Assembly: GCF_040938485.1 (NCBI RefSeq)
Contig: NW_027272455.1
Span: 434,001 to 498,000 of the forward strand
Direction: 5' to 3'
Origin: Diadema antillarum
Taxonomy: Eukaryota
DNA: 64,000 bases
Positions 7,005 through 64,000 of the stretch are shown here, in pieces. Positions within the stretch are counted from its first letter, which is position 1; each line of letters opens with the position of its first letter. The notes beneath the pieces were generated by a model. That model worked only from the letters and a program-made list of their open reading frames with translations, had not been told where the DNA came from and made no database searches. The position numbers and the translations under genes were made by a program.

Positions 7005-7049
<45 letters not shown>

Positions 7050-10000: not shown

Positions 10001-13000
10001 ATCTGTTGCAGTTGGGCACAGTTTAGTCTTTGAAATAGAAATTGAAAGGGTAAAATGCAATGAAAACTTTCACCATAGTTACATGATAAGTATCAGCAAT
10101 TTATCAACCAAAAATTTGTCAACCAACAATTTGTCACTTAATGAAAGGTAATTACAGACACTTTTTCATTTCTCATTGATGCAAGTAAGCTAAATGCAGC
10201 GTTGAAGGCACCATGTTATAAATGATGTTCGTTATTCTGAAGGTTTGCTATTCCAAAACACATGCATTCCCTATACCTGTGTAAATGTTAATCAGAAAAT
10301 GAAATGGGGTTCGTTAAGCCGAACATGAAATTTTACAGCATCATAGCAAAGGTTCATTATTCCGAAAGTTTGCTAATCCCAAAATGAAATATGGTTTCTT
10401 ATTCCAAAGGTTCGTTCGAAAGTGAAATGGGGTTAGTTATTCCAAAGGTTCGTTAGTCCAAAAATAGATATGGTTCGTTATTCCAAAAATGAAAAGAAGG
10501 TGCTTACTAATGAACCTGCGGGATGACAACTGTAAGCGATGCTGCACCAATTTCATTTTTCTTCCTGTTCTTTTTCTTCTAAATAGGTCCCCAGAAGTCG
10601 GGGTGCAACTAATAAATATACGCAGGTGCGTATATCGCTGACACTGCCATGCACTCCCGAGACTCATTAGCACTAACAGATGTGTATTTTTTTCGCATCC
10701 ATTTAATTTGCTTTTCTTCACATCATGTAAATGATGTGAAGTTTCATTAACATGCGACATGATCACATGTATTTTCATACCTTAAACACCCAAAATCCGA
10801 GGGTTCATTTATCCGAAAATAAAATTGGGCTCGTTATTCTGAAGGCTCGTTAGTTCAAATATGAAAAGAAGATGTCTACTAACGAACGTTCGGAATTACA
10901 AACCTTTGTTTTCGGATTAAAGACCTTCGGTATAATCAAACTTTTTTTCTTTTTCATTTTCGGATAAACAAAACTTTGGAATAATGGACCTTATTTCATT
11001 TATGGATTAACGAACCTTTGAAATAATCTTCACATCGTGTAGACGATTTGAAGATAAGAGTAATTAACGTGCAACCTGATTACATGCACTGTATTGTCAT
11101 ATTTGAAACATCCAACGAGCGTTGAGAATAACGAATTGTCACTTTTTTTAATCACATGAATACTCCGGCACTTTCTGTTCTGTTCATCAATACAGTGTCC
11201 TCGTACAATGCATGCTGTACTGCACAGCATACGGTGTAGATTATTTTAACCCTGAAAAGGCTGGTCTTACCTTAAAGGATCCCCCCCCCCCCAACATGAA
11301 CTGCGATTATTTTGTAACGCTTAAAGATTTCACGCTTTTATTTCATGACTTTTTTCTACCCTCTAGAGTTAAACAAAACTTTGGAATAATAGAACTTATT
11401 TCATTTATGGATTAACGAACCTTTGGAATAATCTTCACATCGTGTAGACGATTTGAAGATAAGAGTAATTAACGTGCAACATGATTACATGCACTGTATT
11501 GTCATATTTGAAACATCCAATGAGCGTTGAGAATAACATTTGTCACTACTTTTAATCACAAGAATACTCTGGCACTTTCTGTTCTGTTCATCAATACAGT
11601 GTCATCGTACAATGCATGCTGTACTGCACAGCATACGGTGTAGATTATTTTAACCCTGAAAAGGCTGGTCTTACCTTAAAAGATCCCCCCCCCCCCCCCC
11701 CCAACATAAACTGCAATTATTTCATAACGCTTAGAGATTTCATGCTTTTATTTCATGACTTTTTTCTACACTCTAGAGTTTTATGCAACTCTCGATACCA
11801 AATATGCATGCCCCGCTTACATGATTACAGAGTTATGTCACACTTTCACGTGGCATGTCCAGAAAAATTTGATATTTTGCATTTGTTTGTGTGTAAAGTC
11901 AATGGGAACTGGAATAAACACTGTTTATTGCAGATACTGTTTTCAAACTATATTTTCATTGGATTCTTTTCAGTCTATATTAATGTCATTTGTTAATACA
12001 AATAACTCTGCTAGATCACAAAACAGTGACATACATTAGACTAAAAAACAAAGAAATACTTACAAGTAACATCAAAAATGAAAAACGAAGAAATACATAA
12101 GGAACTAGTGCAAACTGTAGAAACACTGCATATATTCTTGATTATGCTATGTTTAGATTATTAGAGCTTGTTTATGATTTCTGTCATTCAAGTTTGCTTT
12201 GGATCATTCCATGATAAGATATGTACAATAAAAAGTACCCAAACATTCCATTTGCCAACATGATGTGTACTTAATTAGTCATATGCATATACATTAATTA
12301 CTAATTTGTACAAGTGTATCACATATTTCAAACATGAAATAACACAATTGGACAATGAACACCTTCTTTTTTGCATATAATAACCTTGATCAGGGATTTC
12401 TAGACGCATGAATATTTAAAAATTAAAAAAATTTCCATCTATACATAATTAATCAAGAATATCTGTAAAGATAAGAGGAATTATATTAATTTGACTATAC
12501 ATGTAGAAAACATAATGACCTGTGTGTATACTAGATTTGGTTGCAATCAGACAATCAACAGCTAAGAGCTCGGGGGGGGGGGGGGGGGGGGGGGGGCTTT
12601 AGGCCCCTCCCCCAATTTTTCCAGCCTCCAAAATACCCCAGTCTTTTTAGGATTAAGGGTAAGGGCCTGCCGATAGCACAACGACGCTCTTAGGTAAAAC
12701 AGCTGGAACTGAGGATTTCAGTTTTATGGGGTTCCGAGTATGTTTTCTTTTTAATGAACATCTCTTATTTGTAATGAAAGTAAAGTGAGAAATAATCATC
12801 TTCTTGCATTTGCAACACGAACTTTTAAGCATTAATAGGGATGGTTGTGTCTGCAGTGCAATCTGTGATCCTGCCAAGCTGAATCAGATTGAGTCACATG
12901 GCGTTCCCGTTCTATGATATGACAATGCTCATAAGTTGATTTACTTTGACTTACGCAGAAGTCGAATGTCACCAGTCCTGTGAAAGATCGACTTACGCGG

Positions 13001-16000
13001 AGTTGACTGTAATTTGTTTTTAGCTTGTCTGCATTGAATTGATCCCACTCTGTAGTGTGATCATTGGTGCGAGGCTTATGGAGCTCTGGCATGATTTTAC
13101 CACTCATTTGCTGCCAGTGGTATTGAAGTTAATAAACTTCAAGTATATTACCCAGTGTTTCTCATTTCGATCCACCATCACGACTGTTTCCCCCAACTTC
13201 CCCCAACCCTTTTCCATCACTGGCATTCTCAGCCCCACCACCCGCAACCTTTTGATCGAGAAACAAATGGTACATTAGATGAGTGACAAGAATCAAGCGA
13301 AGAATTGGCAAGGTTTTGATGTTCGAGAGCAAAAGAAGAGATGAAGCAATAGTTTTGATGTGGGGATTTTGCTACTCCATGCACCCTAGTCAACTACAGC
13401 ACATTGGTGCATGATATCACCGACTGCACTGACGTGTTGACTTGATCAGATATGCCCCCCTATCATGTGCACTCAATGTTTATGAACTGGCTGGCCTATC
13501 TTTGAAAGGAAGCAACGAATCTGGCTGGTCTGTTTACAGAGTGTAGCGGTACTTCATTGTGAAAATTTGTATGGCTAGAGAGATAATCATGTTTTGTTTG
13601 TGTCATTTTATCATTAACCTGCATGTGAATCAAAGGGGCTGTTTACACTGTACAATTTCTTTCCTAGTTCAGTGGGCCTGCCCAGTCAAATCAGTAGCAG
13701 ACAGGGCATGTGTTAAATTAAAATGTTACTGCATAAAGCAGTGGTCAAGTGCGTTATAGATTGATGTAATTCTTATAAATGTAGATGTGTACATAGGAAG
13801 AGACATAGACAAAAGACATCGGACAAGTACAACAATAGTGCGTGCTGAGTTGCACAAAATTAATCAAGTATTAACATGTACGCCTGCATAGAAACATCAT
13901 GCTTCTGTGCGAAACACACAGGAATGGCTTGGCAATACGTGTATCATGTGACGCAATGCTTCTTGATATACTGTATATATTTAAGTGGTACTAATGTACA
14001 AGTGTCGCCCTGTTTCTGCATCCCCAGGCTGACACGTTGAAGGAGAGATACCAGAAGATTGGGGACACAAAGAGGGCCACGCCCATTGAAGTTCTGTGCG
14101 AGAATTATCCAGGTTTGTTGACCCATTTGGGCGGGGCCACCAGGGATGCGGTCAGGCTTATTAATGTCATCCATTGTGATAGTCGAAATTTGTGTCATGC
14201 TTTCTTGTCCTGTTAGGAAAATCAAGAAAATCAAGATGAATTTGATATCTGTACCTTCATTTCCCTCCTTCAGTAATTGATCTAAAAACATTGTGAGATA
14301 TGCATGAGCACATGATGGCTCACCCGCCAACCTAACCACTCTGACTGTAACAATTGGAGAAAAAAAATGTAAATAACATTTATGTAATCGTGCATACTTG
14401 GGTGCTATGAATAATACATATGAAGGGGAGAGTTAAGATATTATTTGATGAAACTCTTGGCTGAATCACTAGTTTTGCCTGTGTAATGCCAGATCCTACC
14501 ATCGCACCTGCAGAAACCATGTCTTTTTCCAAGGCAAACAAACAATTTTTTTTTGGTTTAATTCACAGAAATTGATTTATTTTTCCAGTTTCAGTATTTA
14601 AATTCCGTAAACCATTGCACATCTAGCGAGAAACATTGGATATCTAGCGAGAAACATTGGATATCTTTGTTCTTGTGAGATTTTTAGTGTCAGATGTGGT
14701 GGTGAGGATATTGATGAAATAATCTTGGATGGTTTGGCCTCCAGCAAAATGATTTGTCTTGTCAAGATCTGGATCTGGATCTTTACCATGCAGGGCCCTA
14801 CTGGGCTTAAACACATTGGTACTTGTGTGGGATCCAAGTGGGATCTTGTACGTGCGTGGGTTGTAACTCACACACACAGGACCTCTATATAAGAAATGTT
14901 GTGCTTTCCGTGCCGTGCCTTTAAGCTTCATTTCGTGCATTGCTTAATTTGTTGGCGTGATTGTCCATTCTCAGATGAGTACATTCCTTGATCATCCTTA
15001 TTCTGTCTCCCTCTCAAACTTTCTACAGAGGAAATGGCTACATATCTCAGGTACGTCAGAAGACTAGACTTCTTTGAGACACCAGACTACAGCTACTTGC
15101 GCAAACTCTTCGCCGACCTCTACGAGAAGAAGGGATACGCAAAATCGCCCGAGTTTGATTGGACCGGGAAAGAGACGGTAGGCCTATAAACTTTCTTTTG
15201 AGATTTTATGTCAATTCATACTAATGAGGGAGTTAAGCTTATATGAAAGTAGTAGAACAGAGAAGAATTTAGTTTATATAGATTTGATTAACATGAACAG
15301 CAAATATCAATGAAATTATGGCTATCCAAATATAGGTACACCAGTCAACCAAATTGTGTTCCATAAAGTATCTCAAAATAGATGCTGTAGTCACATAAAT
15401 GACATCTCTTACACATCACCTACCTTTTGTCTTGGAATTAAGGTGTCTTCAATGTTACCTTTTCATCTTTCTTTAATAAAAAGGTTCCATTTGTATATAT
15501 GTTTGATTGCAAACATTATGTTTGTCATACATGTCTACCACTCTACCTTAATGGCTAATAAACCTGATTTGAGAAGATTTGTGTAAATGTTTTGGTATTT
15601 TGTTGGCCTTGCGAGAATTAATGGGCACCAATGTTTGCAAGTAAGATGAGAGAATCCAGGCAGAGAATACATCGCAATCCATCAATTTCAATGACATCAA
15701 GTTATGTCGCTGGAAGTTTGCTCTGGTTAGGTAGTCTGATTGTGATGTACTCTATTATCAAACTCTGGCCATTTCATTTGACGTTATCATAGATATCGCA
15801 TGTGCCAAGCTCCACGACAGAAGGTGGACCCACTTCGCCGCCCAAAGACAACCGAAGAGACGACAAGGACAACAAACATGGCGTCCGAGGGGTAAGTTGG
15901 GATTTAAAGTTTCGGTCTATGCATGGTGATTGGTATTGTGGTGGTGGTGGTGGTAATGGTGATGATGGTAATGATGATGTTGATGATGGTGGTGGTGGTG

Positions 16001-17862
16001 ATGGTGGTTGTCAGGTGGTTGTTGTAGTGGTAATGGTGATGGTGATTATGATGGTGGTGGTGGTGGATATAATGATGGTGGTGGTAGTGATGATGGTGGT
16101 GGTGGTGATGATGGTGGTTGTTCTAATGATGATGGTAGTTGTTTTGGTGGTGGTGATGGTGATAATGATGTCAGTGTTTATGATGTTGATGGGTACTGTT
16201 GTGTTGATTGTGGTTACTGCTTCCTTCACTGATCAGAGATTACCAGTGGAGAAGAAAAAAACACTGTATTTCTTGATAGTTTAAGATTTAGATATGTGGG
16301 GTAGATATTATGTCATCACAATTAAAAGAAATGCATTAAAAACATGTACAGCATTAATTGTCAGTCTTAGCAGCAAACAGTCCATTTTCTCTACAGCTAT
16401 GTAATATTTTGCTGCTGAATACATGTTTTAGTTTGTCCTCTGGCTGCTTTCATTTCAGTTGGGAACAAAAGGCTGGGTGGAGAGCCAGCGGCAGGGAGGA
16501 CTGGAGCCCCCAGGGACAGGCAACCAGCCAGGCTCCATCCAGGTCATCAGCTCCACCAACGGGGAGGTGGCAGCCGACGAGTTCAACAAGGGTTCGCAGG
16601 CACCCATCACCGCGCCCACGGGCGAGGTGGAGGTGGTAGAAGACACAAAGTAAGTACTGGGTGGCTGCAGTCTGTAGCCATGGCCCATCCAAGAGGGGAT
16701 GGGCTTATTGTTAATCTCAATCTGACTTATCCACAACTTTGCATCCGTTTGTGGACAAATTATGGACAGAATTTTCTGGTCTTTCATTATCACCTTTGCA
16801 TTGTCACTGTGTTAGTCATACCATGAAAATGAAGTGCTGCCTTAAGCAATGGCATATTTTGAATGTCAACGATTAATGTAAAATAATAGGAGCTCAATAT
16901 CAATGAACAGATATATACAGAGCTGTATGGAGGGGATGTGAGATTTTGAGATTTGTATCGAAAGGAATGAGCAGTTTTTCTCCAGCCATTCTTCATCCTT
17001 TCACTTCAGTTGAAGAATGAGAGCTTTAAGCTGTAGAGTTGTATTGTATATGGGGGAAAAACAGGTCTTGGACCATGCCTATTATGACTTATTATAGGGT
17101 ACTGTAAAAGTAGAAATTTTCGTGGTGTTGAAATTTTCGCGCATTTCGCGCAACCCGAAACCAGTGTGAAAATAAAAGCACGCGAATATTTTTGTTTGCC
17201 ATATGTTCCAGTAGTTGATGTCTTGATTCCGCGGAATTCAAAACACGCGAAACTCTTCTTACCCCGCCGAGCGCGAAAACATCCACTTTTACAGTATGAG
17301 AAAAGGGTTCCTCTGCAGTAGATTGATCATTCAATTAGCATTTGTGGATTACCACCCAACTCCAGACTGTCCAGCAAGGGTTTTGGGAGGGGGTTGTCAG
17401 TAAGGACTGGGGAATACATGTGGCAGTTTATTCAAGGGACAGTCTCATTCAGTAATGCTTGAAGCCAAATGGAAGGTTTACACATGCCTGCTATATTTAG
17501 GGTAGAATTTTTTTGAATACCCAGTCCTGTGAGCCAATTAGTGGACTGGTTGGGTAGTTTATGAAGGGGCACTGCAGTCTGGTTCAGAGACTATGAATTG
17601 TAGTACCTGATGCCGTTATCTGAAGTAGCAGTGTGAAGTAGCAGTGTAGAGTAGCAGTAAAACAATTTGTTGCCAAGTTGTGAATCCACTGGATCATTTC
17701 AAGATGCCATGTTAATTATGAGATATGATTAGGCCTCTGTTTGTGGTGACAATTTTTGATCATGTTCTAATTGGACTTCTCCAACACATGCTTCTTCCCC
17801 CGTGCAGGTGCTGTTGCTTCTTCAAGCGAAAAAAGAAGAAGGGCCTCGGAAGGCGTAAGTAG
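4155..17862 (+). CDS. CSNK1G: Casein kinase I gamma (gilgamesh orthologue), 5'-partial gene; 8 coding exons in window: 4155-4303, 5705-5939, 7074-7159, 14028-14112, 15029-15177, 15793-15891, 16459-16649, 17808-17862
   Basis: All junctions are GT-AG and the intron phases chain (1,0,1,0,1,0,0,2) into one frame of about 348 aa. CK1 motifs: [52 protein letters not shown]. Gamma-specific C-terminus: SSTNGE...[26 protein letters not shown]. Confidence 0.96.
4960..5050. mobile_element. 91-bp piggyBac-like mini-MITE with TTAA at both ends
   Basis: TTAAcccaatgaaga at left and tcttcctcaatgggTTAA at right form an imperfect inverted repeat; central near-palindrome cctgattatacttggg. Confidence 0.6.
5705..5939 (+). 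CDS. CSNK1G: CK1 gamma exon with catalytic loop and DFG ([25 protein letters not shown]...IDFGLAKEY...[17 protein letters not shown])
   Basis: ccacag| acceptor and AAAG|gtaata donor; 235 bp. Confidence 0.97.
7074..7159 (+). CDS. CSNK1G: CK1 gamma exon ([29 protein letters not shown])
   Basis: ctacag| acceptor after a (TCTG)n tract and AAG|gtaaca donor; 86 bp. Confidence 0.96.
8990..9180 (-). mobile_element. DINE-1/HINE-like non-autonomous Helentron-type repeat fragment
   Basis: Minus strand reads TTTGTTACCTCTGCCAAGGGAGGAGGTTATGTTTTCACCGGTG, then a (GTTT)n microsatellite, then AATGGATTTGGATGATACTT. This hairpin + microsatellite + core layout resembles DINE-1-like elements; classified by resemblance only. 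Confidence 0.5.
10225..11026. mobile_element. Foldback-type DNA transposon remnant with arrays of an approximately 16-bp subterminal motif (GGTTCGTTATTCCGAA) in inverted orientation
   Basis: Many degenerate forward copies at 10228-10850 and reverse-complement copies (TTCGGAATAACGAACC-like) at 10889, 10975 and 11003. Confidence 0.6.
10965..11780 (+). repeat. Tandem duplication with an approximately 405-bp unit (2 copies)
   Basis: taaacaaaactttggaataat starts at 10965 and 11370; both copies end in ctctagagtt; near-identical ORFs appear at 11212 and 11616. Confidence 0.92.
11650..12656. mobile_element. piggyBac-like non-autonomous element, about 1.0 kb, TTAA-bounded
   Basis: Left TTAAccctgaaaaggctgg (11650) and right ccagtctttttaggaTTAA (ending 12656) form an imperfect 19-bp inverted repeat, with poly-C and poly-G tracts just inside the two ends; no coding capacity. 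Confidence 0.65.
14028..14112 (+). CDS. CSNK1G: CK1 gamma exon ([28 protein letters not shown])
   Basis: ccccag| acceptor and CCAG|gtttgt donor; 85 bp. Confidence 0.95.
15029..15177 (+). CDS. CSNK1G: CK1 gamma exon ([50 protein letters not shown])
   Basis: ctacag| acceptor and ACG|gtaggc donor; end of the kinase domain. Confidence 0.95.
15793..15891 (+). CDS. CSNK1G: CK1 gamma linker exon ([33 protein letters not shown])
   Basis: tcatag| acceptor and GGG|gtaagt donor; 99 bp, phase 0/0, fits between the neighbouring exons; sequence is poorly conserved. Confidence 0.8.
15925..16215 (+). repeat. (GGT/GAT/ATG)n degenerate trinucleotide tract in a CK1 gamma intron
   Basis: Direct inspection; produces poly-V/M, poly-G/D and poly-T/I ORFs. 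Confidence 0.9.
16459..16649 (+). CDS. CSNK1G: CK1 gamma C-terminal exon (...[40 protein letters not shown])
   Basis: tttcag| acceptor and AA|gtaagt donor; matches the CK1gamma C-terminal domain. Confidence 0.92.
17100..17296. mobile_element. TA-flanked Tc1/mariner-like MITE (TACTGTAAAAG...CTTTTACAGTA)
   Basis: 25-bp TIRs with about 21/25 matches and TA at both ends; the same family occurs at 51696-52050. Confidence 0.75.
17808..17862 (+). CDS. CSNK1G: CK1 gamma last coding exon ([17 protein letters not shown]), palmitoylation/polybasic membrane anchor
   Basis: gtgcag|G acceptor completes the phase-2 Lys codon; CCCFFKR is the known CK1gamma palmitoylation motif; TAG at 17860-17862. Confidence 0.95.
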
Positions 17863-25684: not shown

Positions 25685-25851
25685 NNNNNNNNNNNNNNNN
25701 NNNNNNNNNNNNNNNNNNNNNNNNNNNNNNNNNNNNNNNNNNNNNNNNNNNNNNNNNNNNNNNNNNNNNNNNNNNNNNNNNNNNNNNNNNNNNNNNNNNN
25801 NNNNNNNNNNNNNNNNNNNNNNNNNNNNNNNNNNNNNNNNNNNNNNNNNNN
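25685..25851. other. Assembly gap (167 N)
   Basis: N run. Confidence 1.
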
Positions 25852-27900: not shown

Positions 27901-28175
27901 NNNNNNNNNNNNNNNNNNNNNNNNNNNNNNNNNNNNNNNNNNNNNNNNNNNNNNNNNNNNNNNNNNNNNNNNNNNNNNNNNNNNNNNNNNNNNNNNNNNN
28001 NNNNNNNNNNNNNNNNNNNNNNNNNNNNNNNNNNNNNNNNNNNNNNNNNNNNNNNNNNNNNNNNNNNNNNNNNNNNNNNNNNNNNNNNNNNNNNNNNNNN
28101 NNNNNNNNNNNNNNNNNNNNNNNNNNNNNNNNNNNNNNNNNNNNNNNNNNNNNNNNNNNNNNNNNNNNNNNNNNN
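27901..28175. other. Assembly gap (275 N)
   Basis: N run. Confidence 1.
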
Positions 28176-30654: not shown

Positions 30655-31801
30655 CGTCGGCAAAAGCAATTCGCACCCCTGGTTCTGGCAGCACTAATTT
30701 TATACAATATCTATTAGTATTCTACAGTGTTTACTATTTATCGACCGTACTGTACATCCGTACGATACGGAGCACTTATACACGTTTGCATGTACGTATG
30801 CTACTTACAAGTATGTAGGGTCTATGTACGTTACTTCTGACCAATCCATATTGCCAGCCCAAGAGCAAGCCTTAGCCTCATTAAAAAAAAGAAAAAAACA
30901 TGGAGGGGCAAGCATATTTTAGTTCCCCCCCCCCCCATAATTGATAATTCCCGAAATGAGAAGATTTTCTTGCTTTTGAAAGAAAACAAATGTTGCCCCC
31001 ATAAAAATATTGGAAGGCAAGCGCACCATTTGCCCCAACCCACATAATCATAATTCCCGCGATGAAAAGATTTTCTTGCTTTTTGTTAGAATTCAAGAAA
31101 TCTGTCCAATTATTTCACCCAAAAGCAGTGGCGTAACTACGGAGGGGGGGGGGGGGGTGCGCCCCCTGCCAATCCGCTGGTAAAAAAAAAAAAGATTTAC
31201 CGAAATAGTAGTTCAAGTGTTAGTAAACTGCTTTTGAATGAAAGGGTAATCCAGAAATAAGATATTTTTCTATGATTTCTTTTAACCATAATTAAATAGG
31301 TATATAGTGTGAAACATTGTTCAAAAAGCCCGGACCCGACAAAAGATTGTGATTCCTGGTTGGCATTCTGCATAATATAAGCAGGATGTGTTGCAGTGTA
31401 CTCAGTACATCCGAACGAAGAGTCGCTACAATGTTGCGCAATGTGATGTAGAATGTACACCTTTGTACCTTACGCTTCGTTATATCAAAGCTAGATCAAT
31501 GATTTTGCAGTGTTGCTTTACATACTAGTCTATATGAAAATGTCTTGCATTGCCAATAAAAAGACTTGACATGGGCTAATTCCTAACTTTTCCATGTATA
31601 CAATACACACACACTAACAAACACGCACAATTAGTTTAGGGGATGCTCTAAAGTGCAGATTTTGGACATCCTTTCCCCGCTTGGTCACTTCGACGCCACC
31701 TCGCTGGTCATACCTCCCCCAGTCATGAACATAAACCCACACCCTTGACTACCAGTGGCGGATCCAGGGGGAGGGGCGCACCGGGCGTTCCCCCCCCCCC
31801 T

Positions 31802-33305
31802 TTAATTTCCAAAGCGAAAAAAAAAAAATATAGCTGCAAACGGCAGTTTTTGGACAGTAAAATGTCAAAATTTTCAAGCTCGCTCGCTCCTCTCGCTTGC
31901 ATTTAGTCGTAATGCCATTCTCCCTGAAGTTGCCGCCAGTAATTGCCGGCAGTTGCGCCTGGTGCGCCCCCCCCCCCTTAATTTCCAAAGCGAAAAAATA
32001 TAGCTACAAACGGCAGTTTGGGGACTGTAAAATGTCAAAATTTTCAAGCTCGCTCGCTCCGTTCGCTCGCATTTAATCTTTATGCCATTCTTCTGATGTT
32101 GCTGCCAGTAATTGCCTGCAGTTGCGCCCGGTGCGCCCTCCCCCTCCCCCCCCCCCCCTTAATTTCCAAAGCGGAAAAATATGGCTAAGAACGGCAATTT
32201 TTGGACTGTAAAATGTAAAATTTTCAAGCTCGCTCTCTTCGCTCGCTCGCATTTAATTGTTATGCAATTCACCTGATGTTGCTGCCAGTAATTGCCAGCA
32301 GTTCCGCCCGGTGCCCCTCCCCCCTTAATTTCCAAAGCGAAAAAAAATATGGCTAAGAAAGGCAGTTTTTGGACTGTAAAATGTAAAATATTCAAGCTCG
32401 CTCGTTCCGCTCGCTCGAATGTAATCATTATGCTCTCCTGATATTGCTGCCAGTATTTGCCAGCAGTTGCGCCCGATGCGCCCCCTTAAATTCTAAAGCG
32501 AAGAAATATAGCTACAAACGGCAGTTTGTTTGTTTTTTACTGTAAAATGTCAAAATTTTCAAGCTCGCTCGCTCGCTCGCTCGCTCGCATTTAATTGTTA
32601 CGCAATTCTCCTGATGTTGCTGCCAGTAATTGCCGGCAGTTGCGCCCGGTGCGCCCCCCCCCCCCCTCCTTTATTTCCAAAGCGAAAAAATATGGCTCCA
32701 AATGGCAGTTTCTGGACTGTAAAATGTCAAAATTTTCAAGCTCGCTCTCTTCGCTCGCTCGCATTTAATTGCTATGCCATTCACCTGATGTCGCTGCCAG
32801 TAATTGCCAGCAGTTGCGCCCGGTGCGCCCCCCTTAATTTCCAAAGCAAATAAATATGGCTAAGAACGGCAGTTTTTGGACTGTAAAATGTAAAATTTTC
32901 AAGCTCGCTCGTTCCGCTCGCTCGAATGTAATCATTATGCTCTCCTGATATTGCTGCCAGTATTTGCCAGCAGTTGCGCCCGATGCGCCCCCTTAAATTC
33001 TAAAGCGCAGAAATATAGCTACAAACGGCAGTTTGTTTGTTTTTTACTGTAAAATGTCAAAATTTTCAAGCTCGCTCGCTCGCTCGCTCGCATTTAATTG
33101 TTACGCAATTCTCCTGATGTTGCTGCCAGTAATTGCCGGCAGTTGCGCCCGGTGCGCCCCCCCCCCCTCCTTTATTTCCAAAGCGAAAAAATATGGCTCC
33201 AAATGGCAGTTTCTGGACTGTAAATGTCAAAATTTTCAAGCTCGCTCTCTTCGCTCGCTCGCATTTAATTGCTATGCCATTCACCTGATGTTGCTGCCAG
33301 TAATT
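31802..33305 (+). repeat. Minisatellite of 9 units of about 160-185 bp with a 3-unit higher-order period (about 505 bp)
   Basis: Units start near 31802, 31978, 32159, 32325, 32486, 32670, 32834, 32993 and 33171; units 4/7, 5/8 and 6/9 are near-identical pairs. Confidence 0.93.
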
Positions 33306-56679: not shown

Positions 56680-58288
56680 CTAGAATGGAACAAGTGATTA
56701 GAAAATCTGGTGGTGAAAATTTAGATTTAGCAGAGAGAGAACGATAGAGAGAGAGGGGAGGAATAGAGGAGAGAGGGAGAGGAAGGATTGTCGGAAAGGA
56801 AGAAATAAGAGTGAGGGAGATGAAGAAAGAAAAAAAGATATCAAAAAATTCATATACACTATTTAAAAAAACAAAAAACAAAAACAAAATTACAGGCGAC
56901 TCCAGTTGTATGAAGTCCTTGGGACTGACAGTTTTCTTTCGTTACATCGAAAGTTCATTATTGCCCAAGAGTAAAGTATATAAAGATACATATATATGAT
57001 AATTTTGGGACCTGAATTTCTACTTTGTTATAACAGGAGTGCACTGTCCAGATTTAAACAAATGATCTTGCGAGATGATAATGCAATGTGTAAAAAATTA
57101 GGTAATTTTGGGAAATTTGGTCAGTCCAAGTCAAGAAAATACAAAAATTTATCCAGAAATAATGCCCCCGGCACCCTTCGGGCGGAGGCAAAAAAAGTAC
57201 ATGAATGGCACATATTCCTGGAGGAAATATTATCAGAATATTTTGAGAAGGGAATTATATTTCGCTATTACGAAGATTTTTATACTGACCAAAAACTCAT
57301 TTGTATGATATGTTTCAAAATGCAGTTCATGTCAACTGAATGATTGTTGTTGTTAATGCTGTTTGTTTGTCTGAATGCATATGTATATCATATTTCTAGA
57401 CAGTCAAGTTTCTCAAGTCAAATAAGGCAAATCATAATCCAGAGGAGTTTTGAAATTGAGTTCTGCTCGATTCGGGGTGCAGGATTAGAGTATTAGCAGG
57501 CAAGAGTATTGATGAGGTGCAGCTTAGTGTGACCTTGTGGTCATTTTGGCCATGGTGCCTGCATACACATACGGGTGTAATCTTTCACGTCAGCCTGTAG
57601 AGGGTTGCATGTTTCATTGACAGTCTGCCGTGTTTTTTGACAGAGGCGTCATTACGGAATTTCATCCGGAGGTACTGGTTGCTGAGGAGACCGATTTCTG
57701 TTTGTCGACGATACTCGGCAATTTCTGCGATGTGTTATAGTGTACTAATACCCTGGAAATCAAATTTCTGTACAGCTAGAATACACACACACAAAAAAAA
57801 AAACCAGTCATAATTCACCTGTGACAGCCCCTGAAGGTATACATATTTCGATAAGTTAGATCACATCTCAATAAAAATTTAGCACTTGTACTCCGCGTGT
57901 TTACGTTCTGCTCCATAGCTGGTACTGATGTGTGTGCATTCTAGCTATACAGGTATGTTTTTACGAATAACATTGAGATTCCATGTCGATTGATTAGTTG
58001 ATCGCGGGCACGCATTGAATATCACTATTGTTTAAGAATCATGTTTCAGAGACATGATTTACAAACAAATTCTTTGTAATTGTACAAACTCCTCAAAAAC
58101 ATTTAAAAATTCATGGCTTCAAGAGTGCAAGTGTAGTTTCAAAAAAGTTTTTTGAACAAGCATAACAGAATGCCATAACCTGTTGGTAGGTGAACCCCAT
58201 GTTATCTACAAATGTCCTTCACAAACAAAAACAGATAGTACCAATAGTAATCTTTTATAACTCACTTTGATACTTTTCGTTTGGGTTT

Positions 58289-59413
58289 TGTCACAAATGT
58301 ACACACTAGTAGTTATGTACATGTATGATGTACTGTATGCATGGTTGTTTTAATGTGTATGTACACAGGTGGACCAGATTAATGGAGAACATTCTATGTG
58401 GTATACATATAGTACATACAGGCTGACCAGATCAGTGGAGAATTTTCTAGGTGGTATACAATGTAGCTATACAGTACATGCATGGAATAGGAAAAACATT
58501 ATAGCTCACTCAATCTAGAATGATTTCACCCATTTCCAGAATGTTCTGGGAAGTGCTAACATATTTGGCTGAGTGAGGCACTGTCCCTGTAGCCCAATGT
58601 TATTGGTAGTTAATTTTGGTAATGATGTTTTGTACATAGTTAGGCAGTGAGTCATCCAGGTTTCCTGGAACTTAGACTGGCTAGTAGGTTGGAGAGAGTT
58701 ATAGAATGTGCTAGAAGGGGGTGAATGGATAGTATATAAGCCAGAGAAATTCTGCAGTAGGCAGAGTACCCAACACCTCTGCTCTGAGAGTTACGTCACT
58801 TCTGGCTCTGAAGCGACTTGTTATAGTCAGTCCTGTGTTACCTGCTGACCTGTTATGTTTGTGGAGATACTTGGCCTGGGAGACATTTTGCCTGCAGAGA
58901 ATTAATGTGCCTTCATTGGACTCCATATTTTAATGTCAATGGACATTGCTACAGCAAAGCTGTGACGGGCTGGATTCCTAGCTGGACAATATAAAGTGAA
59001 TCATCATCCAACGCATCGACTGGACGTGGTCGTTGGATTCTGCACATTTCGCTGTGAACAGTATACTGTGGATCTATTGTGGACATATACCCTGGATTTA
59101 TAACGCGGACTATTGTAACCTGTGCCTCTGGATTTACGTCGCAGGAATCATTCATCGGTGCATCGCGGATCATTCATTTGTGCATCGAACATCGTATCTG
59201 GACACTACCAGGGAACTGTAGCAACTTTGTGATAGTTTGGATGCATGTAAGTGATTCCATTACCGATTTGTAATTGTTTCTATTGATCATTGTTGTACTG
59301 ATATGACGCCGATTACCAGTCTGTACCCTCAATATCACTGTTAATAAACCGCCTGAACATCAGTTGATTGTTTCTTTTGTGCGATCATTCTCAGAGTGAT
59401 TTTGGTCGTAACA
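58289..59413 (+). repeat. 5' LTR (1125 bp, TGTCAC...GTAACA)
   Basis: TG...CA termini; TATATAAG at 58733-58740; AATAAA at 59343-59348; immediately followed by the PBS. Confidence 0.92.
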
Positions 59414-59417
59414 AAAT

Positions 59418-59441
59418 TGGGGGCTTGTGTCCGAGAATTGA
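59418..59441 (+). promoter_or_regulatory. Primer-binding site, tRNA-Pro-like (degenerate)
   Basis: TGGGGGCTTGTGTCCGAGAATTGA versus the complement of the canonical tRNA-Pro 3' end, TGGGGGCTCGTCCGGGATTTGA; 4-nt spacer after the LTR. Confidence 0.7.
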
Positions 59442-59549
59442 ATTTAAAGCCAAAATATAGAATTTGGAACGTTCCGGAATCTAGAACATTGGTACAGACA
59501 AAATACCAGTTGAGTTGATTGTTCAATTGTATATTGTGTGTAATACATT

Positions 59550-62500
59550 GTGACAATGTCAATCAGTACAATGGATGTTCAGGCATTTGTTCAGAGGACA
59601 GATTTGTCCCTCAGAGATTTGCAAAGGTTACGCAAATGTGATTTGACCGCTGTTGCACAGCATTTAAATGTAGATGTTCCACAAGGTGCAAGAAAGGCAG
59701 AGATTCTTGACTTAGTAGCTGGTCACATGGAGCTCAAAGAAGAAATTGATACTCCAGATCGAGCTCAAATTTCAGATCAAACACGGCTTGAGCTTGCTAA
59801 ATTGGAAATGAAGGAGAGAGAAAGAGCAAGGGAAGTAGAACTGGAAAAAGAGAAGATGAGATTAGAAAGAGAGAGGGAGAAAGAACAAATGGAAATGAGG
59901 AAATTCGAAATGGAGCAGCAAATGAAGTTGCGTGAGATAGAATTGACTCATGCACAGACTGTTGGAAATCGTGAAAGGGCTCCCTCTGAATTTGATTTGG
60001 CCAAGAACATTCGATTGGTGCCAAAGTTTGAAGAAAATAGAGTTGATGCATATTTTGTGTCATTTGAGAAGGTAGCTAACAGTTTGAACTGGCCACAGGA
60101 ATTTTGGCCCTTGCTCCTTCAAAGTGTGTTTGTCGGCAAAGCAGCTGATGTGTACTCATCTCTCTCTGAAGAGCAATCACGTGACTATGCTACAGTCAAG
60201 AAAGCAGTGTTGAATGCTTATGAGTTGGTGCCAGAGGCGTACAGACACAAGTTCAGAAATTCGTACCGCAGACCAGGCCAGACACATGTTGAGTTTGCTC
60301 GTGAAAAAGAAATGATGTTTGATAGGTGGTACAGATCCCTGAAAGTGGATCAGGACTTTGATAACCTACGTGAGGTTGTTCTCTTGGAAGAATTCAAAAA
60401 GAGTGTTGCTTTCAGTGTGAGGTCGCATTTGGATGATCATAAAGTGACAAGTTTGCATAAAGCAGCCTTGATGGCTGATGAGTATGAGCTGACCCACAGA
60501 AATGACAACAGACCACCTTTCAGGAATTTCTCTGGAAATAAGAGAGACAAAATTCAGTCGAGCAATCCAAAGAATGCTGGTCCTGAAAAAGGCACGAGTT
60601 CTGAAACTTCATCGGCACCAAAGCCTCAATCTGACAAAGGGTCCAGTACAAGTGCAAATGTCATCAAATGTTTTCACTGTAACAAGACAGGGCATGTAAA
60701 GTCACAGTGTTGGAAGTTGCAAAACAAAACAAAGAAGGACATGGGATTTGTCATGTCAAAAAGTGTCCTACCCGAAAACAGTGTCCCGTTCAGTGAAACA
60801 CAGGCCATTGAAAGTCAATCTCCCAAATTCAAAGATAGGATGAAGCAGGTGGATGAGAGCTATCGTAGCTTTTTGTTTGATGGTGAGGTGACCCCATGTA
60901 CCTCTGGTGAGGCAGGTAAGCCAGTGGTCATCCTGCGGGATACGGGGGCCTCTCAGTCGTTGATGGTGGATGGTGGTATGACTTTTCCACCAGATAGTGC
61001 AGTGAATGCAAAAGTCTTGATTCAGACTGTTGATGGCAGTTATATGTCAGTGCCACTGTATAGAGTGGATTTGAAGTGTGACCTAGTTTCTGGTCCTGTT
61101 ACTGTTGGAGTTGTTCCTGAGTTGCCCATGGCAGGCATTGATTTTTTGTTGGGGAATGACTTGGCTGGGGACAAGGTGGTTGCGTCTCCAGTTGTTTCGC
61201 ATAAACCAGTGGTGGTTGCTGAAACTGAGCAGTTGCAGGAGGAGTTTCCTGGGATTTTCCCAGATTGTGTTGTGACTAGGTCTCAGGCTCGTAGAGCTGT
61301 TCAAGATGATGCGGATTCTGTTGATGTGGAGGAGAATTCCGGTGTTTGGTTGGCAGAAACCTTTTTCAAGGATTTGAATGATGGGGTTGCTGTATTAGGC
61401 TCCGAGGCTAACAGCGATGGGCTGTTTAGCAAGTCTTCCTTGGTTGAAGCACAGCAGGCAGACTCTGAGTTGAAAGGCTTGTCTCAGACGGCGTGTTCTG
61501 AGGCTGAGGCTGAAAAGGTCCCTGAGTGCTATTATGTCAAAGATGGCATTTTGATGAGGAAGTGGAGACCTCCCCATAGGCCAGCTGATGAGGACTGGAC
61601 GGTGGTCCGTCAAGTTGTTGTCCCTCCTAGTTACCGCGGTGAGATCTTGAGGATTGCTCACGAGTTACCTGTTGGCGGCCATTTAGGCGTCAGAAAGACA
61701 AAGGATCGGATCATGAGGCATTTTTATTGGCCAGGGTTGAATGTGGATGTGGCTGAGTTTTGCAAGACTTGTCACACATGTCAGGTGGCTGGTAAACCAC
61801 AGCATTCAGTGAAGCCGGCGCCATTGATTCCGATACCTGCGTTTGAAGAACCATTCAGTCGGGTTCTAGTCGACTGTGTTGGACCTTTGCCTAGGACTAG
61901 GTCGGGTCACAAGTACCTCTTGACAATCATGGATATGTCTACACGGTTTCCAGAGGCTATCCCATTGAGAAATATCACTGCTAAGACTGTGGTAGATGCT
62001 CTAGTGCAGTTTTTCACTAGGTATGGGTTGCCCAAGGAAGTGCAGTCTGACCAAGGGTCAAACTTCATGTCAGGCATATTTCAAGAGGTGATGTATCGTT
62101 TGGGTGTGAAGCAGCTGAAGTCGTCAGCTTATCATCCCCAGTCCCAAGGTGCGTTGGAGCGCTACCACCAGACCCTAAAGACAATGATTAGGGCATTTTG
62201 TGAGGAGTATCCCGAGGATTGGGATAAGGGCATCCCTTTCCTACTATTCGCAACGAGGGACTCCCCAAATGAGTCGACGGGTTTCAGCCCATTTGAGTTG
62301 GTGTATGGTCATGAAGTTAGGGGCCCACTGAAGCTCATCAAAGAGAAATTCATGACTGAGGATGATGAGGTCCACCTACTTGACTACGTGTCAAAGTTTC
62401 GTGAAAGGCTTTCAAAGGCTTGTGAGGTAGCTAGGGAACACTTGAAAGTGTCACAAGACTCTATGAAGAGAAAGGCAGACAAAAATGCCAAAGCCCGAAC

Positions 62501-62708
62501 TTTCAACCCAGGTGACAAAGTTCTTGTATTGCTGCCCATACAAGGTGAACCACTGAAAGCCAAGTTCAGTGGCCCATACTGTGTCAAAAAGAAACTCAAT
62601 GATGTGAACCATGTGATCAGTACACCAGACAAATGCAAAGATCAGAGAATGTGTCATGTCAACATGTTGAAAGAGTGCTATGACAGAAAGTCAGTTGGTG
62701 TGACATAG
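59550..62708 (+). CDS. Gag-protease-integrase polyprotein, 1052 aa (likely ATG at 59556 or 59571); no RT or RNase H
   Basis: SCAN-related capsid; CCHC knuckle CFHCNKTGHVKSQC (60669-60710); aspartic protease DTG (60939); integrase HHCC (AHELPVGGH...CKTC); D-D(35)-E at 61872, 62049 and 62157; GPY module; stop at 62706-62708. Confidence 0.95.
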   Translation: MTMSISTMDVQAFVQRTDLSLRDLQRLRKCDLTAVAQHLNVDVPQGARKAEILDLVAGHMELKEEIDTPDRAQISDQTRLELAKLEMKERERAREVELEKEKMRLEREREKEQMEMRKFEMEQQMKLREIELTHAQTVGNRERAPSEFDLAKNIRLVPKFEENRVDAYFVSFEKVANSLNWPQEFWPLLLQSVFVGKAADVYSSLSEEQSRDYATVKKAVLNAYELVPEAYRHKFRNSYRRPGQTHVEFAREKEMMFDRWYRSLKVDQDFDNLREVVLLEEFKKSVAFSVRSHLDDHKVTSLHKAALMADEYELTHRNDNRPPFRNFSGNKRDKIQSSNPKNAGPEKGTSSETSSAPKPQSDKGSSTSANVIKCFHCNKTGHVKSQCWKLQNKTKKDMGFVMSKSVLPENSVPFSETQAIESQSPKFKDRMKQVDESYRSFLFDGEVTPCTSGEAGKPVVILRDTGASQSLMVDGGMTFPPDSAVNAKVLIQTVDGSYMSVPLYRVDLKCDLVSGPVTVGVVPELPMAGIDFLLGNDLAGDKVVASPVVSHKPVVVAETEQLQEEFPGIFPDCVVTRSQARRAVQDDADSVDVEENSGVWLAETFFKDLNDGVAVLGSEANSDGLFSKSSLVEAQQADSELKGLSQTACSEAEAEKVPECYYVKDGILMRKWRPPHRPADEDWTVVRQVVVPPSYRGEILRIAHELPVGGHLGVRKTKDRIMRHFYWPGLNVDVAEFCKTCHTCQVAGKPQHSVKPAPLIPIPAFEEPFSRVLVDCVGPLPRTRSGHKYLLTIMDMSTRFPEAIPLRNITAKTVVDALVQFFTRYGLPKEVQSDQGSNFMSGIFQEVMYRLGVKQLKSSAYHPQSQGALERYHQTLKTMIRAFCEEYPEDWDKGIPFLLFATRDSPNESTGFSPFELVYGHEVRGPLKLIKEKFMTEDDEVHLLDYVSKFRERLSKACEVAREHLKVSQDSMKRKADKNAKARTFNPGDKVLVLLPIQGEPLKAKFSGPYCVKKKLNDVNHVISTPDKCKDQRMCHVNMLKECYDRKSVGVT

Positions 62709-63026
62709 GTAGTGGATAGCATGGTAGAATTCAAGGGTGAAAAGTTTTCACCGCATATCATTTCCAGTGTATGTGTTTAGCATATTCATTAATGTGTGCA
62801 AAACAGTTTGATATGATTGTATAAGCTCCGAGAATCCAAGCAATATCATTGTAAATAGTATCCATGAAAAGAGAACATGGAATTAATATAGCTATCCAAA
62901 AGGCATGTGATAGTATGTGATTATTGTTGCTTGACTTGGACTTTACCTCACATTCGTTGTAAATAGCAATGAGAAATTGTGAAGGTAAAAGAAACCCTTG
63001 CTACAGCAAGGCTTTCTTTTTCCCAT

Positions 63027-63035
63027 GGGGGATGG
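63027..63035 (+). promoter_or_regulatory. Polypurine tract (GGGGGATGG) abutting the 3' LTR
   Basis: Purine-rich 9-mer directly before TGTCAC at 63036. Confidence 0.8.
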
Positions 63036-64000
63036 TGTCACAAATGTACACACTAGTAGTTATGTACATGTATGATGTACTGTATGCATGGTTGTTTTAA
63101 TGTGTATGTACACAGGTGGACCAGATTAATGGAGAACATTCTATGTGGTATACATATAGTACATACAGGCTGACCAGATCAGTGGAGAATTTTCTAGGTG
63201 GTATACAATGTAGCTATACAGTACATGCATGGAATAGGAAAAACATTATAGCTCACTCAATCTAGAATGATTTCACCCATTTCCAGAATGTTCTGGGAAG
63301 TGCTAACATATTTGGCTGAGTGAGGCACTGTCCCTGTAGCCCAATGTTATTGGTAGTTAATTTTGGTAATGATGTTTTGTACATAGTTAGGCAGTGAGTC
63401 ATCCAGGTTTCCTGGAACTTAGACTGGCTAGTAGGTTGGAGAGAGTTATAGAATGTGCTAGAAGGGGGTGAATGGATAGTATATAAGCCAGAGAAATTCT
63501 GCAGTAGGCAGAGTACCCAACACCTCTGCTCTGAGAGTTACGTCACTTCTGGCTCTGAAGCGACTTGTTATAGTCAGTCCTGTGTTACCTGCTGACCTGT
63601 TATGTTTGTGGAGATACTTGGCCTGGGAGACATTTTGCCTGCAGAGAATTAATGTGCCTTCATTGGACTCCATATTTTAATGTCAATGGACATTGCTACA
63701 GCAAAGCTGTGACGGGCTGGATTCCTAGCTGGACAATATAAAGTGAATCATCATCCAACGCATCGACTGGACGTGGTCGTTGGATTCTGCACATTTCGCT
63801 GTGAACAGTATACTGTGGATCTATTGTGGACATATACCCTGGATTTATAACGCGGACTATTGTAACCTGTGCCTCTGGATTTACGTCGCAGGAATCATTC
63901 ATCGGTGCATCGCGGATCATTCATTTGTGCATCGAACATCGTATCTGGACACTACCAGGGAACTGTAGCAACTTTGTGATAGTTTGGATGCATGTAAGTG
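63036..64000 (+). repeat. 3' LTR (first 965 bp; predicted end about 64160)
   Basis: No mismatch to 58289-59253 found by eye; three LTR ORFs have identical translations in both copies. Confidence 0.93.

What the first reader, a model, noticed from the sequence alone, without database searches (positions are those of the whole stretch)
58289..64000. RT-less but otherwise intact Gmr1-type LTR element: Gag-PR-IN only, with apparently identical LTRs
Seen: one uninterrupted 1052-aa ORF with intact CCHC, DTG protease, HHCC, D-D(35)-E and GPY motifs. It stops just after the integrase C-terminal module and has no YxDD or RNase H motifs; LTRs, PBS and PPT are all present. Known: Gmr1-clade Gypsy elements use the order PR-IN-RT-RH, so RT should follow the integrase, and LTRs are made identical during reverse transcription. 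Inferred: this copy was recently retrotransposed with RT supplied in trans while keeping its own capsid, protease and integrase. That suggests a semi-autonomous or bipartite system (particle/integrase donor plus RT donor), or a defective-interfering-like parasite of an autonomous Gmr1 family, rather than a decayed copy.
Basis: partly seen in the sequence, partly recalled or inferred. Interest (0 to 1): 0.8.

Follow-up and report, generated by a model that had tools for sequence, protein, structure and literature searches.

The report
RT-less Gmr1-like LTR retrotransposon copy
This is a real, very young copy of an echinoderm-type (Gmr1-like) LTR retrotransposon that keeps its capsid, protease and integrase genes but has lost reverse transcriptase, so it is most likely a non-autonomous element copied by a relative's enzyme; this kind of parasite is known, here in a less usual gene combination.

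Summary
Window 58289-64000 carries an LTR element with one intact ORF (59550-62708, 1052 aa; likely ATG at 59556). The ORF encodes Gag (SCAN-like capsid domain, CCHC), a retropepsin-fold protease and a full integrase, and nothing resembling RT or RNase H. Only 327 nt separate the stop codon from the 3' LTR. The two LTRs are identical over the 965 nt that can be compared, because the window ends inside the 3' LTR. That also means the TSD cannot be checked.

The closest intact relatives have the order Gag-PR-IN-RT-RH, so the Gmr1-type reading is right and the loss is at the 3' end.

No second copy of this family could be reached, so trans-mobilisation of this copy is not shown. A related family (83% DNA identity) in an unnamed ENA assembly gives strong indirect support. 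It includes at least four dispersed RT-less copies in that assembly, plus near-identical contigs in two other assemblies. These share one junction, which differs from the window's. LTR pairs are 98.6-100% identical, two copies have 4-bp TSDs, the ORFs are mostly intact, dN/dS is 0.25-0.30, and there are signs of recombination with RT-bearing partners.

Verdict: a non-autonomous, semi-autonomous-type deletion derivative. It is a new variant of a known kind, of moderate interest.

The parts
58285..58288 (+). Presumed 5' half of a 4-bp target-site duplication (GTTT)
   Evidence: Inference only. The relatives L001 and L004 have 4-bp TSDs. The window's 3' flank lies beyond position 64000.
58289..59413 (+). 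5' LTR (about 1125 nt; TG...CA ends; TATATAA at 58733; AATAAA at 59343)
   Evidence: The repeat starts at 58289. The end was placed by homology with the LTR end ...GTAACA of L001/L002. Signals were found by pattern search and their function is inferred.
59418..59435 (+). Primer-binding site, tRNA-Pro type (11 nt contiguous, then interrupted)
   Evidence: Compared with the MuLV PBS-Pro quoted in PMC1769482. No tRNA gene was available to test this directly.
59556..62708 (+). Single intact ORF, Gag-PR-IN (1050 aa from ATG; 1052 codons from 59550)
   Evidence: dN/dS against the intact relative L009 is 0.17.
60231..60710 (+). Gag C-terminal capsid (SCAN-like) domain and CCHC zinc knuckle
   Evidence: Pfam SCAN aa 228-317, E = 4.5e-7, above cut-off. 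CCHC motif at aa 374-387.
60843..61274 (+). Aspartic protease (DTGA at 60939-60950; LLGND)
   Evidence: Motif. The predicted fold matches retropepsins. Sequence searches were negative.
61620..62672 (+). Integrase: HHCC zinc domain, DD35E core, GPY C-terminal module
   Evidence: Pfam Integrase_H2C2, rve and Integrase_p58_C. Residue spacing checked.
62706..62738 (+). Stop codon, followed by about 30 nt still homologous to the IN-RT linker coding sequence of relatives
   Evidence: Homology to the RT-bearing L002 ends near 62738.
62739..62985 (+). 247 nt with no clear counterpart in relatives, probably diverged 3' UTR. This is where about 1.5-2 kb of RT-RH is missing.
   Evidence: blastn found nothing here. 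Local alignment is borderline for 62853-62919 against the relatives' 3' UTR (score 17-19 against a shuffle maximum of 18-21). All three frames are full of stops.
62986..63035 (+). Conserved pre-LTR block with the polypurine tract GGGGGATGG (63027-63035)
   Evidence: 90-92% identical to L001/L002.
63036..64000 (+). 3' LTR, cut by the end of the window (first 965 of about 1125 nt)
   Evidence: 965/965 identical to 58289-59253.

Best explanation
What it is: a non-autonomous deletion derivative of a Gmr1-like Ty3/Gypsy LTR retrotransposon. This clade has the order Gag-PR-IN-RT-RH, so losing the 3' part of pol removes only RT-RNase H and leaves an open Gag-PR-IN reading frame.

Proposed life cycle; every step below is inferred and none was observed for this copy:
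1. The 5' LTR drives a genomic RNA that carries R-U5, a tRNA-Pro PBS, the ORF, the PPT and U3-R.
2. The RNA is translated into a Gag-PR-IN polyprotein, which the protease cuts.
3. Its Gag co-assembles with the Gag-PR-IN-RT-RH polyprotein of a closely related autonomous element in the same cell.
4. The helper's RT-RH copies the RT-less RNA.
5. Integrase (its own or the helper's) inserts the DNA with a 4-bp duplication.

The identical LTRs mark a recent event of this kind.

Shown: the structure, the absence of RT, the domain order in relatives, and the youth of the copy. Inferred: that the template RNA was already RT-less, and that the element's own proteins take part.
For: Structure and RT absence.

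Domain order and colinearity with intact relatives.

The stop codon lies about 30 nt before homology to relatives ends. So the end of the ORF and the loss of RT look like two separate changes, which hints at more than one generation as an RT-less lineage.

The related family in ENA assembly ERZ26222911 and two other assemblies gives the following support:
- Six contigs (L001, L003, L004, L005, L007, L008) share one RT-less junction.
- Nine proteins in one 90% cluster share the same RT-less C-terminal tail.
- LTR pairs are 100%, 99.5% and 98.6% identical, alongside RT-bearing copies at 99.6% and 98.2%.
- L001 and L004 have different 4-bp TSDs, CTTC and GCAG.
- PBS, PPT and LTR termini are the same as in the RT-bearing partners.
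- dN/dS among RT-less copies is 0.25-0.30 with p<1e-6. It is 0.6-0.85 in the post-IN tail.
- RT-less copies are not one clade in Gag-PR-IN (AU p = 0.0096 without L006b and 3e-63 with it). This fits template switching between co-packaged RNAs.
Against: - Only one copy of the window's own family is visible, and no RT-bearing partner with its LTR is known.
- The TSD and the last ~160 nt of the 3' LTR are off-window.
- The window's junction differs from that of the related RT-less family. It is therefore not a member of that proven lineage, and the support is by analogy.
- The PBS is contiguous for only 11 nt compared with the relatives' 17 nt.
- The constraint on the ORF (dN/dS 0.17 against relatives) may all date from autonomous ancestors.
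- In the related family, recombination with RT-bearing copies could import constrained sequence. Low dN/dS there does not prove selection on the RT-less elements' own proteins.
Confidence: 0.55

Rival explanations
1. Born-deleted dead end. An autonomous parent RNA was reverse-transcribed by its own RT, and the enzyme jumped from the IN-RT linker to the 3' UTR. That would create an RT-less DNA copy in one step. The copy would have identical LTRs and a TSD but would never have been mobilised as an RT-less RNA.
For: A single copy is visible. The junction is unique to the window. Other, different deletions at the same IN-RT boundary exist in relatives (L006b lacks reference positions 4715-5111; L010 joins the linker to the last 31 nt of an LTR). 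So such deletions arise often.
Against: The ORF ends at a stop about 30 nt upstream of where homology ends. That needs a second change, or a parent that already carried it. The related family shows that such products can go on to multiply.
Confidence: 0.25
2. Post-insertion genomic deletion. A recently inserted autonomous copy lost about 1.5-2 kb by a chromosomal deletion.
For: This cannot be excluded from one copy.
Against: There are zero LTR differences in 965 nt. That leaves little time for both a deletion and the separate stop codon. No repeats flanking the junction were seen.
Confidence: 0.12
3. Assembly artefact. RT-RH is present in the real genome and was collapsed or mis-joined in the assembly.
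For: Young repeats are hard to assemble. The window contains two N gaps elsewhere (25685-25851 and 27901-28175), which were left untouched.
Against: There is no gap or repeat at the junction. The reading frame and cis elements are coherent. The same architecture is assembled independently in three other ENA assemblies for the related family.
Confidence: 0.05
4. Domesticated host gene derived from gag-pro-int, not a mobile element.
For: Gmr1-like gag gave rise to the vertebrate SCAN domain (PMC3424704), so domestication does occur in this clade.
Against: The ORF sits between identical kilobase LTRs with a PBS and a PPT.
Confidence: 0.01

Closest known systems
Gmr1-like clade of Ty3/Gypsy LTR retrotransposons (Gmr1 of Atlantic cod and relatives in deuterostomes and some protostomes)
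   Same: Integrase follows protease directly. The closest intact relatives place RT-RH after IN, which is the defining order as described in PMC3587641. Gag has a SCAN-like capsid domain (PMC3424704). The nearest named hits are echinoderm and hemichordate proteins.
   Different: This copy has no RT-RH at all. No phylogeny against Gmr1 itself was made.
RT-less family in ENA assembly ERZ26222911 (loci L001, L003, L004, L005; also L007 and L008 from two other assemblies)
   Same: The architecture is the same (LTR-PBS(Pro)-Gag-PR-IN-short 3' UTR-PPT-LTR). DNA identity is 83-84% and protein identity 82%. LTR pairs are identical or near-identical.
   Different: The deletion junction is different and the LTR body is unrelated. 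That family's ORF runs about 106 aa further into a diverged linker tail.
Semi-autonomous GAG-only plant LTR retrotransposons (RLG_Quinta with RLG_Cereba; RLG_Sabrina, RLG_WHAM)
   Same: These are non-autonomous derivatives that keep an intact ORF for a particle protein. They share PBS and LTR termini with an autonomous partner and recombine with it (PMC11302176).
   Different: They lack both RT and IN. This element keeps PR and IN and lacks only RT-RH. They are plant elements with the standard Gypsy domain order.
Mouse IAP I-delta-1 and ETn/MusD pairs; barley BARE2/BARE1
   Same: Internally deleted or defective LTR elements that are mobilised in trans by full-length relatives. They are often more active than the helper.
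   Different: The set of genes lost is different, and so are the host group and the retroelement lineage.

Membership tests
Ty3/Gypsy (Metaviridae) LTR retrotransposon | Long terminal direct repeats with TG...CA ends, a PBS after the 5' LTR and a PPT before the 3' LTR | tested here: met
   The 3' LTR is seen only for 965 of about 1125 nt.
Ty3/Gypsy (Metaviridae) LTR retrotransposon | Gag with CCHC, retropepsin, and integrase with HHCC + DD35E + GPY/F | tested here: met
Ty3/Gypsy (Metaviridae) LTR retrotransposon | Encodes reverse transcriptase and RNase H | tested here: not met
   No Pfam RVT_1 or RNase H hit at E<=1. tblastn with a relative's RT-RH found nothing. There are only 327 nt after the stop codon. 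The element is therefore a derivative of the family and not an autonomous member.
Gmr1-like clade | Integrase lies upstream of RT (PR-IN-RT-RH) | tested here: inconclusive
   Met in the closest intact relatives (P0136, P0004). In the window IN follows PR with no RT between them. Because RT is absent, the order cannot be read in this copy itself.
Gmr1-like clade | Groups with Gmr1 in an RT or IN phylogeny | not tested
Gmr1-like clade | SCAN-like capsid C-terminal domain in Gag | tested here: met
   Pfam SCAN, 30.0 bits against a cut-off of 27.
Non-autonomous / semi-autonomous LTR retrotransposon (criteria as used for the Quinta/Cereba pair) | Lacks at least one protein needed for replication but keeps the cis elements | tested here: met
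Non-autonomous / semi-autonomous LTR retrotransposon (criteria as used for the Quinta/Cereba pair) | Several dispersed copies share the deletion, each with its own TSD | not testable with these tools
The feature is met in the related family only.
Non-autonomous / semi-autonomous LTR retrotransposon (criteria as used for the Quinta/Cereba pair) | An autonomous partner with the same PBS and LTR termini exists in the same genome | not testable with these tools
   There is none in the window. The feature is met in the related family (L002 and L009 against L001 and L004).
LARD / TRIM | No coding capacity between the LTRs | tested here: not met
   There is an intact 1050-aa ORF.
Defective-interfering-like parasite | Lowers the helper's replication | not testable with these tools
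   This needs an experiment.

The most novel reading that the evidence does not exclude
Gmr1-like elements of echinoderms may maintain long-lived two-component systems. In these, RT-less Gag-PR-IN elements would persist for long periods beside RT-bearing partners. They would be kept compatible by repeated template-switch recombination in shared particles, and selected for their own capsid, protease and integrase. The window copy would be one such lineage, having arisen independently of the one in the related family.

The abrupt change in the related family is what suggests an old RT-less backbone with a repeatedly refreshed 5' part. Its copies are about 98% identical to the RT-bearing partner through IN, then about 82% in the 200-nt bin next to the junction.
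Probability: 0.25. Interest if true: 0.6.

Novelty: new variant of a known kind. Interest (0 to 1): 0.4.

Why it matters
Non-autonomous LTR elements that keep part of their coding capacity are well known, especially GAG-only elements in plants. An element that keeps capsid, protease and integrase and depends on a partner only for RT-RH is a different division of labour. The unusual Gmr1 gene order makes it easy to generate, because any 3' truncation leaves an open Gag-PR-IN frame.

If such lineages really persist, they offer a natural system for two questions. Which retroelement proteins act preferentially in cis? How do helper and parasite stay compatible?

For genome annotation the practical point is that 'Gag-PR-IN only' proteins are common in this clade. 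They are a mixture of true RT-less elements and split ORFs.

Tried and rejected
1. Standard-order Gypsy with an in-frame RT-RH deletion between PR and IN. Rejected: relatives are colinear from PR into IN with no gap, and RT follows IN.

2. Same lineage as the related RT-less family. Rejected: the junctions differ. Window homology to RT-bearing L002 ends at L002 8540 and resumes at 10582. For L001 the figures are 8738 and 10150.

3. Using the many RT-less proteins in the hit list as support. 33 of 120 hits end before RVT_1. Of five sampled loci, L011, L012 and L013 have RT-RH in the next ORF, and L010 is a truncated copy without a 3' LTR. Only the L001 type is a true family.

4. Further copies of the window family. 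None were found in the window, among proteins of 579-1841 aa (best hits 82-86% identical), by exact look-up, or in JGI metagenomes and GTDB genomes.

5. A tRNA-Pro gene to test the PBS. None was found in the window or the loci, and Rfam found nothing.

6. Protease by sequence. Pfam and PDB sequence searches were negative or marginal. Only the fold search succeeded.

7. The large representative-protein search was not run, because no claim here rests on the absence of relatives.

The majority line that align_proteins printed on its own for the protease segment was not used.
Full report
**1. What is in the window**

A direct repeat starts at 58289 and again at 63036. It has no mismatch over the 965 nt that can be compared before the window ends at 64000. 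Homology with the LTR ends of related elements places the end of the 5' LTR at 59413 (...GTAACA), giving an LTR of about 1125 nt. The 3' LTR is therefore cut by the window. Its last ~160 nt and the 3' target-site duplication cannot be seen.

Four bases after the LTR comes a PBS of the tRNA-Pro type. It is 11 contiguous nt at 59418-59428, and the match to the relatives' 17-nt PBS is then interrupted. The type was assigned by comparison with the MuLV PBS-Pro quoted in PMC1769482. A short polypurine tract at 63027-63035 abuts the 3' LTR, inside a 50-nt block that is 90-92% identical to relatives. TATATAA (58733) and AATAAA (59343) lie in the LTR; their function is inferred.

**2. The ORF**

One open frame runs from 59550 to 62708 (1052 codons; likely ATG at 59556).
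- Pfam finds a SCAN-like capsid domain, Integrase_H2C2, rve and Integrase_p58_C. It finds no RVT_1 or RNase H even at E<=1.
- CCHC, DTGA, HHCC, D-D-35-E and GPY are all intact, and there is no YxDD-like motif.
- The protease is invisible to sequence searches. A model of aa 432-575 built on 31 natural homologues (pLDDT 74.5) matches retroviral proteases by fold.
- The 327 nt after the stop are closed in all frames.
- tblastn with a relative's RT-RH finds nothing anywhere in the 64-kb window.

**3. Which lineage**

The word-based protein search returned more than 1400 relatives. The nearest named ones are from sea urchins, an acorn worm, a feather star, sea cucumbers and bivalves. From this I infer, without showing it, that the source is an echinoderm.

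Full-length relatives are about 1530-1620 aa. The window protein aligns end to end with their first ~1049 residues. The closest intact one, P0136, has the order SCAN, CCHC, IN, RVT_1, RNase H. This is the order that defines Gmr1-like elements (PMC3587641), and a SCAN-like Gag is also a Gmr1-like trait (PMC3424704).

**4. The junction**

The comparison is with RT-bearing L002, which is 83% identical in the coding part.
- Homology ends near 62738 and resumes at 62986, just before the PPT.
- The 247 nt between have at best a borderline resemblance to the relatives' 3' UTR.
- The stop codon (62706-62708) lies about 30 nt before homology ends, at a position where the relatives read on.

The end of the ORF and the loss of RT-RH therefore look like two separate changes.

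**5. Can trans-mobilisation be shown for this copy? No.**

There is no second copy in the window. No protein closer than 82-86% exists in the large collection within the length range searched. The exact sequence is not in the collection. Nothing turned up in JGI metagenomes or GTDB genomes.

**6. Indirect evidence from a related family**

The two best hits come from one unnamed ENA assembly (ERZ26222911). L002 and L009 are RT-bearing elements there, with LTR pairs 99.6% and 98.2% identical. L001 is RT-less, with 1208-nt LTRs that are 100% identical.

Further look-ups gave these results:
- RT-less copies L003, L004 and L005 lie on other contigs of that assembly.
- L007 and L008 are near-identical contigs (99.9%) from two other assemblies, and they encode the same 1169-aa protein.
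- All six share one junction relative to L002.
- Nine cluster members share the same RT-less C-terminal tail.
- L001 and L004 have different 4-bp TSDs. L003 shows none by my reading.
- PBS, PPT and LTR termini match those of the RT-bearing copies.
- Pairwise dN/dS among RT-less copies is 0.25-0.30 over Gag-PR-IN (binomial p from 8e-7 to 2e-13). It is 0.6-0.85 in the short tail after IN.
- In Gag-PR-IN the RT-less copies do not form one clade (AU test p = 0.0096 with L006b left out and 3e-63 with it).
- Identity to the RT-bearing partner drops from about 98% to about 82% in the 200-nt bin next to the junction.

The simplest reading is a persisting RT-less lineage that exchanges its 5' part with its helpers by template switching in shared particles.

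Caveats apply. The assembly has 2-6x coverage. L006b is itself a different partial RT deletion. Recombination also blurs whose proteins are under selection.

**7. What this means for the window**

The architecture seen here can multiply, and it arises repeatedly at the IN-RT boundary. The window's junction is its own, however, so the support is by analogy.

A copy born deleted during reverse transcription of an autonomous parent would look identical. Only the separate stop codon argues mildly against that. I put these probabilities on the explanations:
- trans-mobilised RT-less lineage: about 0.55
- born-deleted copy: 0.25
- later genomic deletion: 0.12
- assembly artefact: 0.05

**8. Comparison with what is known**

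Semi-autonomous LTR elements that keep GAG and share PBS and LTR ends with a helper are described in wheat and its relatives (PMC11302176). Partly deleted elements mobilised in trans are known in mouse and barley (my own knowledge). My limited literature searches found no description of a Gag-PR-IN, RT-only-less element in the Gmr1-like clade. I rate it a new variant of a known kind, of moderate interest.

**9. Limits and conduct**

- N runs at 25685-25851 and 27901-28175 were left as they are.
- The alignment tool's automatic majority line for the protease segment was not used.

Noticed in passing
L011:8449-8471 (also L012, L013): Some Gmr1-like elements have Gag-PR-IN and RT-RH as two ORFs. 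In L011 the LTRs are 99.8% identical, the two ORFs overlap by 23 nt with RT-RH in the +1 frame, and the Gag-PR-IN protein cluster has 297 members. This could be a programmed frameshift at the IN-RT boundary, or a shared mutation.
   Followed up: partly
L010:4850-4880 and 8391-8421: This Gag-PR-IN copy has a perfect 17-nt PBS-Pro. Its post-IN linker is joined directly to the last 31 nt of an LTR, and there is no 3' LTR body or PPT. It is a truncated copy. Its protein, P0102, represents a 90% cluster of 1006 members.
   Followed up: partly
L006 (circular-flagged contig ctg929677_11x_c): There are two elements in a row. The second (L006b) starts with the RT-less family's diverged linker and then jumps into RT, lacking reference positions 4715-5111. 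This is a third deletion type, or a recombinant between RT-less and RT-bearing copies.
   Followed up: partly
L005:729-1814 and 6262-7286: The two LTRs of this RT-less copy are only 84% identical. The 3' LTR is 97% like the LTR of RT-bearing L002. This is either an inter-element recombinant or an assembly chimera.
   Followed up: no
one search hits P0020 and P0080: Gmr1-like polyproteins are filed under bacterial names (Breoghania sp., Campylobacter sp. CS_ED1). This is most likely animal DNA contaminating bacterial assemblies.
   Followed up: no
window 31791-33305; 10965-11780; 15938-16161: Three tandem repeats: a 170-nt repeat of about 9 copies at 80% match, a 405-nt unit repeated twice, and a GTG-rich microsatellite inside a 160-aa ORF. 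The other long ORFs of the window have no Pfam hit.
   Followed up: no
L001:11500-15265: There is a long array of roughly 275-nt tandem repeats downstream of the RT-less element (self-matches).
   Followed up: no
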